A stretch of 64,000 nucleotides of DNA from Euprymna scolopes (Eukaryota): NCBI GenBank assembly GCA_053919585.1, contig CM132821.1. One strand, 5' to 3'. The position numbers and the translations under genes are program-made. This document shows positions 7,625 through 63,388 of this stretch, piece after piece (the first letter of the stretch is position 1; each line of letters starts with the position of its first letter). The notes under the pieces are model-generated. The model made no database searches, was not told the DNA's origin, and saw nothing but the letters and a program-made list of their open reading frames with translations.

Positions 7625-8068
7625 GAATGCAAATTAGACTTCGTGGCTTAGTGGGGGTTCCCTTTTCTCTTCCCTGCAACCTCTCCCCACAGATGAGACG
7701 TTGCGAGCCTGTCTTTGTTTTATCGTTATTTCCATATCAAGTGCTCGTCTGAGCTTCAGTCTTTGCCCCCCCTCGCCAATCTTTCAAGAAAAACACCGGT
7801 CTAACTGAAAACACTGTCAAAAATATTCCCCATTTTTATCTGCGCATAATTTAAAACGTAGATTCCATGAACAAAGCTCCTTTCTTGAAAGTGCACGCCT
7901 GTTGAACACTCTTTCTGACTACAACTTGGATGTCTTCAAGTCCAACATAAACACATTCCATTACTAACGATTACTATGATATTATCCCATTGATTGTTGT
8001 ACGCGCAATAACCCTTGCCCCGAGTGGCTTTCGGACCTTGATAACTGGTGACTACCACGTAAAAAAAG
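7625..8068 (+). mobile_element. 5'-truncated CR1/Jockey-group LINE 3' fragment
   Basis: Encodes SLQPLSHR.DVASLSLFYRYF; 3' UTR ccttgccccgagtggctttcggaccttgataactggtga plus A-tail, matching other copies. Confidence 0.8.
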
Positions 8069-21329: not shown

Positions 21330-23685
21330 TGAAGTCGCACAGATTTCAATATCTTTTTCTCTCGGGATTTAACATTAATGGTTCATTAAACTTTCTTTTT
21401 TTACCTGATCTTCGGGGTTCAGGTGTATATTGAGGCGGTTCCAAATTAAAGGATTCGTATATGATGTCCATGGTTTCCTCCTCTTCGACTGCTGTTGTAT
21501 AATCCCCATCTTGAATGTGGCGTTTTTTATTTGGTTCAGGTGCTTTTTATGTATATTTTGTGGATCTTTAATCATGTATGTACACTCACCAATGCGTTTA
21601 TCCACTGCTCCACATTCCTAGTAAGAAGTGTTATTCCTGTAGCACTTAAAATATACTCGATCTCCCGAGTTATATTACTTTCTTATCATGTGTGTAGTGT
21701 TTCGGACAATTTCCTGTCTTGACAATAGTTTATCAAACGCTGATTTCACCTTTCTGGTAAACGTTAAATCAGCTGGTGATGTTTGACGGGGTATTAGGGT
21801 GCCGTGTTATCCTATATATTTGCAAAAATTGTTGCAAAGCTTTTTCCGTCGGTATCCCAATGGATTTTTTCAACGCTCGTTTTAACGTGTCCACGAACCT
21901 CTCCGCGAGGTCGTTCGATCTTGGATGATACGGTGGAGTAGTGATGTGCTTTACTTGGAACGTGTCACAAAATTCCTTAAAGTCTGTGGATGTGAATTGA
22001 GTTCCATTGTCAGTGACCAGTGTGCCTGATACACCTAATCGTGCAAATAACTCGTGTATGAATCCTATTGGGTTATTCGTTGTTGGATTCCTGCAACGCA
22101 TTACCTCAGGTCATTTTGTATAACTATCTACTACAATTAAGTAGTAATTTTCTCCTACTGGACCAGCGAAGTCCATGTGAATTCTCGACCATGGTTGGTC
22201 GGATTTCGTCCAAGGTTTGTGTACTATAGGTGGGGATTTTGCCGCTAACTGGCATCCTTCACATCTATTTATTGTTGTAGCTATGTCGACGTCCATGTTA
22301 CGCCAGTATACGTAGCTTCTCATAAGAGACTAATCTGATTTATCCCCGGATGTCCTGTGTGGAAGTCTCTCAAAATCCTCTTCTGCAACGTTTTAGGTAT
22401 TACTACTCTCTCGCTATATAATAACACATCGTTACATATGGAAAACATTTCCTGAACCTTTTTGTCATTTATAATTTTTTTCTTTTATATCATTTATATA
22501 TTCATCTTTATCGGCTTCTCTTTTAATGTCCGACAATGTTACCGGTAGTTCTTTAATGATGCTACCATATTTTTCACTTCGACGTTTGTTCGAATTGCTG
22601 CAATCACTGATTCTTCCAAATTATGTTTCTGTGGTATAAGTCTTGAAAGTCCATCCGCATGGCAAATTTTTTTCGATGCTAGATGTTGTAACTGGAAATC
22701 GTAATTCAGTAGGATCGTCCCCCAGCGCAGCAATCTATTTGCGGTGTATACAGGCAATCCTTTTTTTTTTTTGATCCGTAGATTGTGACTAATGTTTTAT
22801 GGTCGGTTTCAAGTATGAATTGTCTACCATATAAATATCGTTGGAATTAAGTCACTGCAAAGATTATTCTCAACGCTTCTTTTTCAATCTGTGAATACAC
22901 CTTCTCTGCTGGAAGCAGCGTTCTTGAAGCGTAAGCTATCGGCTTTCTAGATCAATTAGGCATGATATGTTGAATGCATGCTCATATGCCGTAGGAACTA
23001 GCGTCACTAGCGACGACTATATTTAATTTTGTGTCATAGTGAGTTAGAAAAAATTCAGATGTTAGTGCGCTCTTTATTTTGTCAAAAGCGGTTCGACATT
23101 CTTGCGTCCAGTTCCAAGGTGTGTCCTTTTTTAACAGCTCATTTAATGGAGCTAGCAAATTATGCATCCCCTCAATAAAAGACTGGTAATAATTTGCGAG
23201 TCCTAAGAAACTCTGCAAGGGTGTTACCTTATTAGGTGCTGGCATGTTTTTTATTGCCGCAGATCTTTCTGGGTCTGGACGTCGCCCATGTTTATTTATT
23301 ATATGTCCAAGATACTTAATTTCGCTCATACAAAAGTGGCATTTATTTTCTTTTACTTTAAACCGAATTCTTGTATTCGAGTGAATACTTGTTTTAAATG
23401 TTTCTTATGTTCTAGGGATTTGCTCCTGATAACAATGTCGTCCAGGTATGCATATGCGCACTCAATACGACTTAGCATGGTGTCTATCACTTGTTGAAAA
23501 ATGGCAGGCGCGACTTTGATGCCAAAGGGCAACCGGTTGTACTTATACAATCCCTTATGCGTGTTGATGCATAGTATTTTTGAGCAATTCTCCTCGACCG
23601 GTATTTGTAAATACGCGTCGCTCAAGTGTATCTTGGAGAAGATATTACCACCATTCAACTTTGTGAATATTTCCTCTGAGCTTGG
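21330..23685 (-). pseudogene. pol: Gypsy pol remnant (RT-RNase H-integrase) with frameshifts and stops
   Basis: FSKIHLSDAYLQI, YNRLPFGIKVAPAIFQ, YLDDIV, SDASSYGI, TANRLLRW, HADGLSRL, PWSRIHMDFAGP, LIVVDSY, VTDNGTQF, PPYHPRSNDLAERFV. Confidence 0.92.
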
Positions 23686-56044: not shown

Positions 56045-58655
56045 TTATAATTAACGGATACTCTAATTTAACATCTAAATCTGACCTCCAAGATCGCCAT
56101 GGGTATGGAATGTGTGCCAACATTAAAGATGGCTTCCCGTGTGGCATGGATATCTCCGGAGAAGATCCTAATTTACCCTATATGTGCTTCCGGGTTGCAC
56201 TTGCTTACACCACTGCATTTTTATTTGCCCTCTATCGGCCACATAACAGCGGAATTACTATCTTTAAGAGCATATCTGAGAAAATAGACCATATACTGTC
56301 TGCACATCTATCGGCTTACATACACATCTGTGGTGACTTCAACGTCCATAACGTGTAATGGCTGACCCATTCAAATAAGACAGACGATGAGGGAAGGTTT
56401 TGTCATGATTTTGCCATTGCTTATGACCTCACTTAGATTGTTCGCAAACCCACCGTGTGCCCGATACTACTGGTCAATATGCAAGCCTCCTAGACCTTAT
56501 TTTCTCAACTTCCCCTGAGCTATTTTCATGTTCCCTTCATTCTCCTCTAGGATCCTCCGACGACTCCGTCGTATCAGTTCAGATAAAAATTAAATGTAAT
56601 AAGTCCCAAGATGTACCCCTCCACATTACTGTATACCTATACTATATGGTTGACTGGGATAGCTTCCGTACATTCTTATCTGTTTTACCTCTGCATTCTA
56701 TGTTTAAAAAGGAGGGGTCCTCTATAGTATCCGATCTGACCGAATGGTTAACTGTAAGCATAAGCAAATTCCAACCATCTAAAAAATTCCAACAAAAACC
56801 TAACAGCCAGCCATAGTTTTCCCCAGAATATGCTGCTGCTATTGGACACAGACATCACTTTTTCCACAACTACCAATGAAATAGATGGACTGTGACTCTA
56901 GCTGATTTCAGAAACGCCATAAACCTCTGTAAAAGAGTAATAAAAATGCAAGAGAGCTATATGCTCAGTGTTTAATCCAAAGTAGTTGATCAGCGGCTTA
57001 ATTCCCACCAGTTTTGGCAAATAGCAAATAGGATCCTGAACAGAAGTGTGCGTTCTATACCAACCATTATCAATGGACCAGAGGTCATCTCGTCAGCATC
57101 AGACAATGCCAAACTATTTGCAAAGAACTTTGCAGCTAATTCTACCCTATGCGACAAAGGCCACCAACTCCCCATCCTTCCTCCTATAACACGGAACACG
57201 CTTGGTAACATACAAATATCGGGGCATAGGAGCGCAAAGCTAATCAAAAACCTTGGTTCCAGTAAAGCAACGGGCCCTGACGGCATCCCAATTATAGTGT
57301 TAAAAAAGCTTCACCCAGAACTTGCTCCCATACTTACAAAACTTTTTAAGTGTTGCCTTAAGGAGAAGTGCTTTCCGACTCCCTAGAAAACCTCATCAGT
57401 ATGCCCTGTATTTAAGACTTCAGTTGATAAGTCATCTTCCTCTCAGTACATACCAATAAGTCTCCTGTGTGTTATGAGTAAGTTGCGGGAATCCGTATTA
57501 AATAGAGAAATAGTAAAGCACCTCAGCAGAAATAACCTTCTTAGTGACACACAATATGGTTTCCGTTCTGCAAGATCTATCGCAGATGTGCTAACGGTTA
57601 TATCTCAAAGGATTAGTAAATCTCTTTACAAAGGCTTTTTTCTAGGGCAATTGCTCTTGACATATCAAAGACCTTCGACAAGGTATGGCATAAGGGGCTA
57701 CTTCACAAGATTTCCAGCTACGGTATAACTGGAAATGTTTTCTCAATCATTAAATAATTTCTCTCCGATAGGCTCATAAGAGTAGTGGTCGATGGACAAA
57801 AATCAGAGGCCTGCAGTATTAATGCTGGAGTCCCTCAAGGGTCAATCCTTGATCCAACTCTCTTCTTGATCTACATCAATGATCTCCCTAAACACATACT
57901 TAAATCATTTGTTGACATCTATGCTGATGACACGACAATCTACGGAAACAAATCAAAGGCTGTAAACGACAAAGTTCTCTCTGATTCTCTCTCGTCTGAT
58001 CCCGAGCGCGTGGTTTGTGGGGGAAGACGTGGCTGGTTACCTTTAATGCATCTAAAACCAAACTCCTATTTTTACATCATAAACGTTCTGATCCTCATCT
58101 GGCATCAATTGAAATGGATGACTCTCGTCTAGGAGAAGCCCCTGTTTTGACAAGCTTCTGGGTGTGTCCTTTACTCCCGATCTGAAATGGAACACGTACA
58201 TCAAGTATGTTGCCAAGTCGCTGGAAAGATGGTGGTATCCTTCTACCGCTCCAGAAGATATCTCACTACTGATGCAATTATCTTTCTATATAAAAGCAAA
58301 GTACGTCCAAGGATGGAATACTGCTGCCATATCTGGGAAGGAGCTGATAAAAACACCCTATCCTGCCTTGCCATAGTACAAAATATTTATCTGTGCCTAA
58401 ATCAAAACGTAGATTCCATAAACAAAGCTTCTTTTTTAGAACTGCACGCCTGTGGAACTCTGTTCCGTCTGCTTGCTTCATACCTGACTACAACTTGAAT
58501 CTCCTTAAGTCCAACCTTAACAAATTTCTAATGAACCATCCTCTTAAGTAAACACGTTATTATATCTCCACACTAATTGACTGTACTTGCAATAACCCTT
58601 ATCCCTGAGTGGCTTCCGGGCATTGGTAAGTGGTGAACACCGTGTAAAAAAAAAA
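56045..58655 (+). mobile_element. CR1/Jockey-group LINE ORF2 (APE endonuclease + RT), decayed, with 3' UTR and poly-A
   Basis: ICGDFNVH, LDLIFS, PLGSSD, KATGPDGIP, LLSDTQYGFRS, GVPQGSILDPTLFLIYINDL, YADD, VRPRMEYCCHIW; A-tail 58646-58655. Confidence 0.93.
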
Positions 58656-60960: not shown

Positions 60961-61014
<54 letters not shown>

Positions 61015-61072
61015 CTGATTGACGTAATGAACATTTAAATTAAAATGTTAAAAATTCAACGCTATTTCACAT

Positions 61073-61216
61073 GGTTAATGGTAGCCGAATGGATACGGTC
61101 TCCGCTAATCGAGCCAGAGATGTCTCGTGTCGCGGGGTTCCAATCGTTCGGCTTGTGTTAATCGTAACACCCTGCACTGAAGAATCCCGAAAGGATGAAA
61201 CACTAGTGTCTGTAGG
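61073..61216 (+). mobile_element. tRNA-head + hammerhead SINE/retrozyme-like unit (family B)
   Basis: A box TAGCCGAATGG (61082-61092), B box-like GGTTCCAATC (61136-61145), hairpin gtgtta-atcg-taacac, then the HHR; lies between two (TA)n tracts. Confidence 0.7.
61171..61216 (+). ncRNA. Type I hammerhead ribozyme with intact core and palindromic stem III
   Basis: cctgca CTGAAGA atcc(cgaaa)ggat GAAA cac(ta)gtg TC tgtagg; predicted cleavage after C61210 (GUC). Confidence 0.88.
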
Positions 61217-61240
61217 TATTTAATTATTATAGTAAAAAAA

Positions 61241-61291
<51 letters not shown>

Positions 61292-63388
61292 TCTTACTAG
61301 ATGACGACTTACATTTTCTTGTGATTGAATGAGGATCAATGAATATTACATACTCCTTATTCTTTTGTTATCATTGAAATCAGTGTAGTCATATAGGGTT
61401 TGTTTATGAAATTTATAGAATGCCTGCTTTATCTGGAGACCAACAGCGGTGCACTGGGGAGAAGTTTCCTATGCATCCCCTTCGTAGTTTCCTTATTTTC
61501 AATAAATATTGTAGGTCTACACTGATAAAAGGAACCATAATGTTGATTTTATAAAATGATTGGTGTATAGCAATTGAATTACGGATAAAATTTAAAATAA
61601 AATAAAGTATCATTGTCTGATTATACTCTAATCAAAAACAGTTATTTTGAACGCACCTATGTCTTATCAAATAACTTACTGTTTATTTAAATCGCCGGAC
61701 CCTTGTACCTCAATAAAAGTGCTCAAGTGATCTTATTATGCGAACTGTATCAGAGTAAAAATCGAACTGTATATTCACATATCGAGTTTTGAATGTCTGA
61801 GGCATTCCGATACAACACCTTTCTAAGAACTCTTCCAGATACGTAAAGTACATTTGTTTGATATTTTATCACGAAATAACTCAAACATAGACAAAGTGTC
61901 TTATATATAAAACTTGAAACGTTAAGATTGTCTCAATTTAATATGTACTCGTTTTATGTGCAAGATGCATGTGTTACCGTAGTTTTTCTTGTCATATCCA
62001 AAGTTATCTATAAATTAGGGATATGATTAAGTTACTACCAGTGCAGCTAGCATGCTGTTTATATTACATATACAGTAATGCGTCTTGTCATGGTCGAAAA
62101 AATGGAACAAGGATAGAAATTCTAAATGTGAGCAATTCGATGCAAACGTCAATATCTTTCTGGTATTTGGGACCTTCTAAAATAAATGTGTGTAATAGTT
62201 TTATGGGGCAAACTTAGCGGTCGTTTTATTGTGATTAAATGAAATGCAACAGATTCTTCGGAGAATATTCCGAGGTAAGTTTTTAAAATAATTACGGTGA
62301 TGCAATATCGCAATACTTTAAACTAGGTAAGACAGTGTTCAAATTATCAAGTCAAAGACTTTTTCCGTTCCTACTAAAAAAAATGGCTAAATATTAGAGG
62401 GATATACCAGATGTGAAGAAAATACTTCATATTCCCGAGTTGAATATAGTAGTGTTATATCATACAAGCAGGTTTAGTTGGCTTACTAGTGCATTAGAGT
62501 GATTCCATTGGCTTTGCGGCAGCCTCGACAGTATCTTCTATATATATTCCTTTATATTCATGTTGTCTATGTGCATTTTGCGTAAGTTTTTGAAATCTAG
62601 ACAAGCAGTTTAACGTGCTCAGTTTTTCATTTCGTGGTTTTCTACTGAGTTCAAATTATTTTTAATGAAACAGTAATCATTCAGCGATAATTGGAGACGG
62701 CGACAGCTTAAAAGTGTTTGCTACAATTTCTTCACGGCTTTTTATCCGTGCCACAAATGATTCTTAATTGTAAATCAATAGATGACGCGTTTGTGAAGTA
62801 TACTGCTTTAGTTTTCTCGTGGAGCGCTAGAAAACACAAATCTAAATTATCATCTCAAAAAAGGCGTCGACACATTGACAACTCTTAATAATTCCTGTCC
62901 GATACCTGCCAAGTCATATTTGGCGTAGTAACTCTAAAAATGTGAACTTCATTAGCTTACTGTTCTCTAGTTGTTGTAGCGACTTAAATCGATCAATTGT
63001 TTGCCATCAAAAATACCCCGTTCGGATGCAATTTAACGTTTTCAATTAAAATAAACGTATCCTCTTTCGCACGTTTAAATTTTCATCTGTCATACAACAT
63101 TTATAGATATAAAACTCTATTTGCTCTACTGAAGATATACTCGAGGCTCCGTGTAACGCTAAACTACTGTCGATACCGAGGTTGGATTCGATAAATGAAT
63201 TCCGAGAATATTTTTTACAAGAATTCTATCAGTATAAACATATCTTCATTTTGTAGACATTTACTCTTTTAAATATGGCAAAATTACTTCATGTTTAACG
63301 CGATATGTTAGCAAGATAATTTATTTTTACACTGTCTAGAATAATAAATAACTTATATGAACCCTGTTTTGTTTCCTAATATAATCTA

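What the first reader, a model, noticed from the sequence alone, without database searches (positions are those of the whole stretch)
61073..61216. Second, unrelated tRNA-head + hammerhead unit with an intact catalytic core
Seen: A box, B box-like motif, a short hairpin, then a type I HHR with all core nucleotides, a GUC triplet, 6-bp stem I, 4-bp stem II and a self-complementary stem III (ACACUAGUGU). No similarity to family A is visible outside the core and boxes. Established: palindromic stem III marks the minimal HHRs of Penelope-like elements, which can act as dimers. Inference: a SINE built from a tRNA promoter fused to a PLE-type terminus. This is the best candidate for an active ribozyme in the window.
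Basis: partly seen in the sequence, partly recalled or inferred. Interest (0 to 1): 0.82.

Follow-up and report, generated by a model that had tools for sequence, protein, structure and literature searches.

The report
Hammerhead-ribozyme retroelement copy in TA microsatellite
This is one copy of a short non-coding jumping element that joins tRNA-gene-like promoter boxes to a self-cutting hammerhead RNA motif and sits inside a (TA)n microsatellite; the motif is real and intact, but the kind is already known and this scan has met it many times in the same mollusc genome.

Summary
A complete type I hammerhead (HHR) lies at 61171-61216 (+). It is preceded by an exact Pol III A box (61082-61092) and a B-box-like motif (61136-61146). 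The roughly 233-bp insert sits between two pure (TA)23 tracts. Each motif, and their linkage, is well above chance.

- Positions 10.1-11.1 are A-U, not the usual G-C.
- Helix III is only 3 bp plus a CUAG loop as a monomer, and is predicted unstable.
- The predicted dimer is the classical double hammerhead.
- Neither ARAGORN nor the Rfam tRNA model sees a tRNA in the head.
- The HHR has the canonical metazoan architecture (Sm-alpha, newt, retrozyme), not the Penelope "minimal" one.
- The element is not fully unrelated to family A. The module order matches, and the 30-nt linker between B box and ribozyme is significantly similar.

The best reading is a solo copy of a non-autonomous hammerhead retroelement, probably copied into (TA)n by a Penelope-like enzyme. 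I could not find other copies, because no eukaryotic genome collection is available. Family size, mobility and activity are therefore untested. This scan has already found the same kind on other DNA of this genome, so I class it as a new member of a known kind.

The parts
60965..61011 (.). 5' flanking (TA)23 microsatellite (target)
61012..61081 (+). AT-rich leader of the insert, upstream of the A box. It has no similarity to anything else in the window. It begins TGTCTG, the same hexamer that spans the ribozyme cleavage site; this is unexplained.
61082..61092 (+). Pol III A box TAGCCGAATGG, an exact match to TRGCNNARTGG. It is part of a D-arm-like hairpin GCCG-AAUGGAUA-CGGU (61084-61099).
61100..61136 (+). 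Long hairpin: CUCCGC pairs with GCGGGG, with an inner CGAG/CUCG stem. It occupies the place of the anticodon and variable arms and is not cloverleaf-like.
   Evidence: the tRNA model is silent
61136..61146 (+). B-box-like motif GGTTCCAATCG, with 2 mismatches and the invariant T-loop positions kept
61147..61170 (+). Linker between the B box and the ribozyme. Counted up to CUGA it is 30 nt, against 31 nt in family A. It starts TTCGGCTTG, as in family A.
61171..61216 (+). Type I hammerhead ribozyme motif with predicted cleavage after C61210
61217..61244 (+). AT-rich 3' tail of the insert, including an A7 run. Its boundary with the microsatellite is not sharp.
61245..61290 (.). 3' flanking (TA)23 microsatellite
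61314..61317 (+). First run of four or more T downstream, a possible Pol III terminator. It lies about 100 nt beyond the ribozyme cleavage site.

Best explanation
The roughly 233-bp stretch 61012-61244 is a single-unit copy of a non-autonomous, non-coding retroelement of the hammerhead-bearing kind (animal non-LTR retrozymes; schistosome Sm-alpha SINE-like elements), inserted into a (TA)n microsatellite.

Shown:
- The anatomy, in order: AT-rich leader, A box, B-like box, 30-nt linker, type I hammerhead, short AT-rich tail, with (TA)23 on both sides.

Inferred mechanism:
- The A and B boxes recruit RNA polymerase III, which would start near 61070-61075. It would read through the ribozyme, because there is no T4 run before 61314.
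- The hammerhead cuts after C61210 and so defines the 3' end of an RNA of about 140 nt carrying a 2',3'-cyclic phosphate.
- Helix III is a 10-nt palindrome that is unstable as a hairpin. Efficient cutting would therefore need two ribozyme copies pairing as a double hammerhead, either two transcripts or tandem units.
- The RNA is reverse-transcribed and integrated at (TA)n by the reverse transcriptase and GIY-YIG endonuclease of an autonomous Penelope-like element located elsewhere in the genome.
For: - The HHR is real. Rfam gives a full-length alignment at 25.6 bits, E 5e-4. My descriptor finds 2 hits against 0.03 per shuffled window.
- The box pair is unique in the window (0.05 per shuffle) and lies 30 nt upstream of the HHR on the same strand.
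- Pure (TA)23 tracts flank both sides. All four HHR-bearing inserts in the window lie in (TA)n.
- ViennaRNA results: the monomer HHR fold is -6.3 kcal/mol against a competing minimum-energy fold of -8.0; the helix III hairpin is +1.7; the dimer minimum-energy fold is -29.4, against 2 x -8.0, and is exactly the double hammerhead with a 10-bp helix III.
- Literature: type I HHRs with short palindromic helix III act as dimers (PMC4209133, PMC7229834). Animal retrozymes are 170-400 nt, low in GC, and linked to Penelope-like elements (PMC7229834; bioRxiv 10.64898/2026.07.22.740005). Some Penelope-like clades (Naiad, Neptune) prefer (TA)n (PMC8557442). Sm-alpha is a tRNA-derived SINE-like element with an HHR (PMC2770079).
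- Earlier notes of this scan report the same design in many windows of this genome. These are leads, not independent evidence.
Against: - No second copy was found in the window or in the metagenome, prokaryote or viral collections, so repetitiveness and mobility of this family are not shown here.
- The Rfam score is below the gathering threshold.
- The A-U pair at 10.1-11.1 replaces the conserved G-C.
- The locus has only one HHR, so it cannot make a circle or a cis dimer.
- The head is not detected as a tRNA.
- No Penelope-like ORF appears among the ORFs scanned; the nearby reverse transcriptase belongs to a LINE with an AP-endonuclease.
- The tail-versus-leader similarity expected of a partial tandem is at chance level.
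Confidence: 0.72

Rival explanations
1. It is a fragment of something larger: a 5'-truncated piece of a longer tandem retrozyme array, or a solo pseudo-LTR of a Penelope-like element. In that reading the boxes and ribozyme are internal features, not the head and tail of a SINE.
For: - About 70 nt of leader lie upstream of where a Pol III transcript would start, which a simple tRNA-derived SINE would not carry.
- Family A in the same window occurs as a 3.6-unit array and as a single unit.
- Retrozymes are related to Penelope pseudo-LTRs (bioRxiv 10.64898/2026.07.22.740005).
- The insert starts with TGTCTG, the hexamer that spans the cleavage site.
Against: - There is no second HHR, and no significant similarity between the leader and the post-cleavage tail.
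- No Penelope ORF lies nearby.
- The HHR architecture is canonical, not the Penelope min-HHR (PMC4209133).
Confidence: 0.2
2. It is a chance juxtaposition of motif-like strings in AT-rich DNA, with no biological unit.
For: - The Rfam score is below gathering. By simple scaling of the E-value, a 25.6-bit Hammerhead_1 hit is expected about once by chance in roughly 6 Gb.
- There is only a single copy in the window.
Against: - The joint occurrence of a full HHR (0.03 per window), an A+B box pair (0.05 per window) 30 nt upstream on the same strand, and (TA)23 on both sides is far below chance.
- GC is 51% in 61073-61216, against 34% for the window.
- The module order and linker match family A.
Confidence: 0.02
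3. It is a host-domesticated small RNA gene: a Pol III transcript whose 3' end is set by the ribozyme and which has a cellular function. In that reading it is not a selfish element.
For: - The ribozyme core is intact while all family A copies in the window are mutated.
- The head is modular and strongly paired.
Against: - It lies inside a microsatellite, like the obviously mobile families.
- No conservation data are available.
- The fold z-score is only -2.1.
Confidence: 0.04

Closest known systems
Schistosoma Sm-alpha / Sj-alpha SINE-like elements (Ferbeyre et al. 1998; Laha et al. 2000; as cited in PMC2770079 and PMC8490949)
   Same: Both are short non-coding repeats that combine a Pol III tRNA-type head with a type I hammerhead. 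The ribozyme architecture is the same: 6-bp helix I, 4-bp helix II, and a very short palindromic helix III. The Rfam Hammerhead_1 consensus aligns column for column.
   Different: - Sm-alpha heads are recognised as tRNA-Gln pseudogenes by tRNA finders (PMC2770079), whereas this head is not recognised as any tRNA.
- Here 10.1-11.1 is A-U.
- There is no sequence similarity outside the core.
- The host is a mollusc and the insertion is in (TA)n.
- The element is about 233 bp, against about 335 bp for Sm-alpha.
Animal non-LTR retrozymes (Cervera and de la Pena 2020, PMC7229834)
   Same: Both carry a type I HHR, have a unit of 170-400 nt, are low in GC and non-coding, and are presumed to depend on Penelope-like elements. 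Amphibian members also have ribozymes that depend on dimers.
   Different: - Retrozymes are defined as tandem repeats with two or more HHRs that give circular RNAs. This locus has one HHR and less than one repeat.
- That paper does not mention Pol III, and mentions tRNA only in other contexts such as tRNA ligases.
Minimal hammerheads of Penelope-like elements (Cervera and de la Pena 2014, PMC4209133)
   Same: Both are type I, are thought to work as dimers, and have a palindromic 15.x-16.x region. Both are associated with retroelements that insert as tandem or partial copies, often in microsatellites.
   Different: Min-HHRs have no helix III or loop 3, or almost none. They also have a longer helix II (about 6 bp) with a bulged base after A9, and a conserved G10.1-C11.1. 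None of these applies here.
Family A of the same window (31664-32860; 45559-45962 minus strand)
   Same: The module order is the same, the B-box-to-CUGA linker has the same length (30 against 31 nt) with significant similarity, both have GCA next to the core, and both end a few tens of nt after the cleavage site in (TA)n.
   Different: - BLAST finds no similarity.
- The A-to-B spacers differ (43 against 32 nt) and are unrelated.
- Helices II and III differ.
- Family A is tandem with a 325-bp unit, and all its cores are mutated.

Membership tests
Hammerhead ribozyme, type I (Rfam RF00163) | Conserved core: C3 U4 G5 A6 N7 G8 A9, G12 A13 A14, A15.1-U16.1, H17 | tested here: met
   CUGAAGA ... GAAA ... 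U-C are read directly and aligned to the model.
Hammerhead ribozyme, type I (Rfam RF00163) | Three helices around the core, with helix I open | tested here: met
   Helix I is 6 bp, helix II 4 bp, helix III 3 bp as a hairpin or 10 bp as a dimer.
Hammerhead ribozyme, type I (Rfam RF00163) | Score at or above the curated gathering threshold (34 bits) | tested here: not met
   25.6 bits; absent from the gathering scan.
Hammerhead ribozyme, type I (Rfam RF00163) | Conserved G10.1-C11.1 pair | tested here: not met
   It is A61184-U61196 here. The second HHR candidate at 48047 has the same A-U, so this may be a lineage trait.
Hammerhead ribozyme, type I (Rfam RF00163) | Self-cleavage | not testable with these tools
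   Needs in vitro transcription. Thermodynamics predict a poor monomer and a favoured dimer.
tRNA-derived SINE | Internal Pol III promoter: A box and B box at tRNA-like spacing | tested here: met
   A box exact, B box with 2 mismatches and the invariant positions kept, spacing 43 nt; unique in the window. Promoter activity itself was not tested.
tRNA-derived SINE | Head recognisably derived from a tRNA (cloverleaf or sequence) | tested here: not met
   ARAGORN finds none. The Rfam tRNA model gives no hit at E<=10 in 501-nt and 101-nt scans. Only a D-arm-like hairpin is present.
tRNA-derived SINE | Many dispersed copies with target-site duplications | not testable with these tools
   No copy in the window and no eukaryotic genome collection is available. 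Metagenome, prokaryote and viral scans were uninformative. Target-site duplications are masked by (TA)n.
tRNA-derived SINE | 3' tail shared with a partner LINE, or a poly(A)/simple-repeat tail | tested here: not met
   No similarity to the LINE at about 56100-58550. By contrast, the classical SINE pair at 7639 and 26138 has a tail that appears, by eye, to match the coding end of that LINE.
Animal non-LTR retrozyme | Tandem units (two or more) each with a type I HHR, able to give a circular monomer | tested here: not met
   The locus has a single HHR, and leader-versus-tail similarity is at chance (392 of 2737 genomic controls). The family as a whole could still be tandem elsewhere.
Animal non-LTR retrozyme | Unit of 170-400 nt, GC below 50%, non-coding | tested here: met
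   233 bp and 38% GC; no ORF.
Penelope-like element min-HHR | Helix III or loop 3 absent or minimal, longer helix II with a bulge after A9, located in a pseudo-LTR next to an RT/GIY-YIG ORF | tested here: not met
   The architecture is canonical. No Penelope ORF is in the window among the ORFs scanned.

The most novel reading that the evidence does not exclude
The cassette 'A box, B box, fixed linker of about 30 nt, type I hammerhead, short tail' may be an old shared module that underlies outwardly unrelated families in this cephalopod-like genome. Pol III transcription with a ribozyme-defined 3' end would then be the general expression strategy of Penelope-dependent elements here. Such a strategy is not described for animal retrozymes outside schistosomes. 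Each insertion may also bring or regenerate a full-length (TA)n tract, which would help explain the very high density of (TA)20-30 tracts.
Probability: 0.2. Interest if true: 0.55.

Novelty: new member of a known kind. Interest (0 to 1): 0.3.

Why it matters
If the family is confirmed genome-wide, it adds a further lineage to the tRNA-box-plus-hammerhead retroelements. This design has been studied experimentally only in blood flukes. It would also support the view that Pol III heads are a regular part of hammerhead retroelements in cephalopod-type genomes. This particular copy has an intact core and a 10-nt palindromic helix III. That makes it a convenient natural substrate for testing monomer against dimer cleavage, and for testing whether A-U at 10.1-11.1 is tolerated. 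It does not open a new category.

Tried and rejected
1. Whole-window Rfam scans, at gathering and at E<=10, did not list the HHR because of filters. Only the local scan did.
2. ARAGORN and Rfam tRNA searches of the head, and of a family A head for comparison, gave nothing.
3. blastn of the insert against the window with word size 7 found only chance-level short hits.
4. An exact-pattern scan for the HHR (21 specified bases) in metagenome contigs gave one hit, L001. It is a phage-like contig with an unrelated CUGAUGA...GAAAC string, about what chance predicts. Prokaryote genomes and viral contigs gave none.
5. The search of earlier findings by sequence and by detailed words was blank.
6. The partial-tandem hypothesis, that the tail after the cleavage site is homologous to the leader, failed. 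The alignment score is reached by 14% of genomic controls.
7. CpG observed/expected as an age proxy is uninformative, because the window is not CpG-depleted (0.98).
8. The equal (TA)23 flanks could have been a long target duplication. This was rejected as evidence, because 20-32 repeats is the ordinary tract length in the window.
9. The search for a Penelope-like partner found only a degenerate AP-endonuclease LINE and LTR-element pol fragments.
10. Ferbeyre 1998 and Lunse 2017 are not held in the library, so Sm-alpha features are cited second-hand.

Full report
**What is there**

Read directly, 61171-61216 on the + strand spells a complete type I hammerhead.
- Helix I is CCUGCA paired with UGUAGG: 6 bp, including G61174.U61213.
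- The core is CUGAAGA.
- Helix II is AUCC/GGAU with loop CGAAA, followed by GAAA.
- Helix III is the palindrome ACACUAGUGU.
- The cleavage triplet is GUC, with the cut predicted after C61210.

Rfam's Hammerhead_1 model aligns over its whole length (positions 1-45). The score is 25.6 bits, E 5e-4, in a 501-nt local scan. That is below the curated threshold of 34 bits. The hit was invisible in both whole-window scans because of the speed filters.

I wrote a structural descriptor requiring the core, helix II of at least 3 bp, helix III of at least 2 bp, a UH triplet, and at least 5 of 6 pairs in helix I. It finds two motifs in the 64-kb window: this one and 48047-48101. The expectation is 0.03 per Markov-shuffled window.

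The 10.1-11.1 pair is A-U, not the conserved G-C. As a monomer, helix III can be no more than ACA/UGU closed by CUAG.

**The head**

- TAGCCGAATGG (61082-61092) matches the A-box consensus TRGCNNARTGG exactly. It lies in a D-arm-like hairpin, GCCG-AAUGGAUA-CGGU.
- GGTTCCAATCG (61136-61146) differs from GGTTCGANNCC at two positions. It keeps the T-loop positions G53, T54, T55, C56, A58 and C61; that these are the critical ones is my own knowledge of tRNA-gene promoters.
- The spacing between the boxes is 43 nt.
- This is the only such box pair on either strand of the window, against 0.05 per shuffle. It ends 30 nt upstream of CUGA on the same strand.

The head is not a recognisable tRNA, however. 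ARAGORN finds none. The Rfam tRNA model gives no hit at E<=10 in a 501-nt scan or in a 101-nt scan. Between the boxes, the predicted fold is one long hairpin, not anticodon and T arms. I therefore call it a head with tRNA-gene-type promoter boxes. Descent from a tRNA is plausible but not demonstrated. A family A head gives the same negative result.

**Context**

The insert (61012-61244, 233 bp, 38% GC) lies between two pure (TA)23 tracts, 60965-61011 and 61245-61290. The GC-rich core 61073-61216 is 51% GC, in a window of 34%.

(TA)n tracts of at least 6 repeats cover only 2.3% of the window. Yet all four hammerhead-bearing inserts sit in them:
- the family A array at 31664-32860;
- its inverted monomer at 45559-45962;
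- the insert at 47868-48227;
- this one.

The equal flank lengths are not evidence of a duplication, because 20-32 repeats is the normal tract size here. The first T4 run downstream on the + strand is at 61314. A Pol III transcript would therefore run through the ribozyme.

**Relation to family A**

BLAST sees nothing in common. The A-to-B spacers (43 against 32 nt) and the upstream sequences are unrelated.

The order of modules is identical, though. The linker from the B box to CUGA has the same length (30 against 31 nt) and aligns with family A linkers. Only 13 of 3000 and 9 of 3000 shuffles reach the observed score. Both linkers begin (T)TCGGCTTG and end GCA. This is a small, post-hoc test. 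Still, 'unrelated' is too strong: the two may share an old cassette, or the 3' half of the same tRNA.

Every family A ribozyme in the window has a core mutation: CAAA, GACA, CUGAUGU, CUGAGAA, or a deletion.

**Would it cut?**

ViennaRNA gives the following.
- The catalytic secondary structure of the 46-mer is -6.3 kcal/mol.
- A competing fold that pairs CACUG with UAGUG is -8.0 kcal/mol.
- The helix III hairpin alone is +1.7 kcal/mol.
- Two copies co-fold at -29.4 kcal/mol, against 2 x -8.0. The structure is exactly the classical double hammerhead: a 10-bp intermolecular helix III (-13.4) and swapped helices I.

This agrees with the literature. Metazoan type I HHRs with a short palindromic helix III cleave poorly as monomers and well as dimers (PMC4209133, PMC7229834, PMC6155905).

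This locus has only one ribozyme. A dimer would therefore need a second transcript. The effect of A10.1-U11.1 is unknown. The candidate at 48047 has the same helix II (AUCC/GGAU), which suggests a tolerated lineage trait rather than decay of this copy.

**What kind of thing it is**

The closest described systems are three.
- The Sm-alpha/Sj-alpha SINE-like elements of schistosomes have a tRNA-derived head and a type I HHR (PMC2770079, PMC8490949).
- The animal non-LTR retrozymes are tandem units of 170-400 nt with type I HHRs, expressed as circular RNAs (PMC7229834).
- A 2026 preprint ties the retrozymes to the pseudo-LTRs of Penelope-like elements (10.64898/2026.07.22.740005).

Some Penelope-like clades (Naiad, Neptune) show a bias for (TA)n microsatellites (PMC8557442).

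The ribozyme here has the canonical metazoan architecture: 6-bp helix I, 4-bp helix II, and a short palindromic helix III. It does not have the Penelope 'minimal' architecture of no helix III and a long, bulged helix II (PMC4209133).

The locus fails the retrozyme definition on tandem structure. It has one HHR, and leader-versus-tail similarity is at chance level. It also fails the strict SINE definition on a recognisable tRNA and a LINE-type tail.

No Penelope ORF is in the window. The reverse transcriptase about 3 kb upstream belongs to a degenerate LINE with an AP-endonuclease, and another lies in an LTR element.

**What could not be done**

No tool here searches the source genome or any eukaryotic assembly.
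- Pattern scans of metagenome, prokaryote and viral collections gave one chance-level phage-like hit and nothing else.
- The scan's own notes say that the same genome, described there as a 5.9-Gb mollusc and probably a cephalopod, holds tens of thousands of such ribozyme motifs. They describe several families with tRNA-like heads inserted in (TA)n. I treat these notes as leads.
- The notes make it likely that this is one more family of that population. They also mean that the kind has already been reported by this scan on other DNA of the genome.

**Verdict**

This is a real, apparently intact solo copy of a hammerhead-bearing non-autonomous retroelement in a (TA)n microsatellite. It is a new member of a known kind, of modest interest.

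Noticed in passing
window 48047-48101 (+), inside the insert 47868-48227 between (TA)n tracts: A third full hammerhead motif by my descriptor: helix I 5 of 6 pairs, CUGACGA, and helix II AUCC/GGAU identical to that of the 61171 ribozyme (also A10.1-U11.1). Helix III is 4 bp with a 10-nt loop holding the palindrome GAAUAUUC, and the triplet is GUA. Rfam gives no hammerhead hit at E<=1. No clear B box lies upstream.
   Followed up: partly
window 31664-32860 (+) and 45559-45962 (-): All five family A hammerhead copies carry a mutation or deletion in the catalytic core (CAAA, GACA, CUGAUGU, CUGAGAA, and a deletion after CUGAU). The array and the dispersed monomer are therefore ribozyme-dead.
   Followed up: partly
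window 7639-7958 (+) and about 25800-26138 (-): Two copies, about 82% identical over 320 bp, of a classical SINE with an exact A box at its 5' end. By eye, its 3' tail (CTGACTACAACTTGGATGT.TTCAAGTCCAACATAAACA) translates like the C-terminal end (PDYNLNLLKSNLNKF) of the degenerate LINE at 56100-58550. That would make it a LINE-mobilised SINE, in contrast with the hammerhead-tailed elements.
   Followed up: partly
window about 56100-58550 (+): A degenerate, frameshifted non-LTR retrotransposon. It shows a GDFN endonuclease motif, an RVT_1 hit (E 2.7e-9) and YADD. It is not a Penelope-like element.
   Followed up: partly
window 21769-23655 (-): Fragments of an LTR-retroelement pol gene: RVT_1 (E 8e-19), RT_RNaseH_2 and the integrase core.
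   Followed up: no
whole window, e.g. 29156-29206 with 29305-29357, and 32876-32924 with 33016-33079: The window has 41 (TA)n tracts of at least 6 repeats (2.3% of the window), mostly 20-32 repeats. They often come in pairs that bracket short unique inserts of 100-350 bp. The pairing suggests that insertions split or regenerate the microsatellites.
   Followed up: no
window 61012-61017 against 61207-61212: The insert begins, right after (TA)n, with TGTCTG. This is the same hexamer that spans the ribozyme cleavage site (GUGUC|UG). It could mark a template that started at a cleaved upstream ribozyme, or it could be chance. The sequence following it is not significantly similar.
   Followed up: partly
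window 41884-41998 (-): A partial U2 snRNA-like match at 34.8 bits, below the gathering score of 46. It is probably a pseudogene or retro-copy.
   Followed up: no
window 38211-38615 (+): An ORF with helix-turn-helix matches (DUF4817, HTH_32). It is likely a remnant of a DNA-transposon transposase.
   Followed up: no
L001 221-260 (+), metagenome contig Ga0307417_10120352: A CUGAUGA-AUCC-AAAA-GGAU-GAAAC string in a short phage-like contig. It was found only because it matches the search pattern, and its flanks are unrelated.
   Followed up: no
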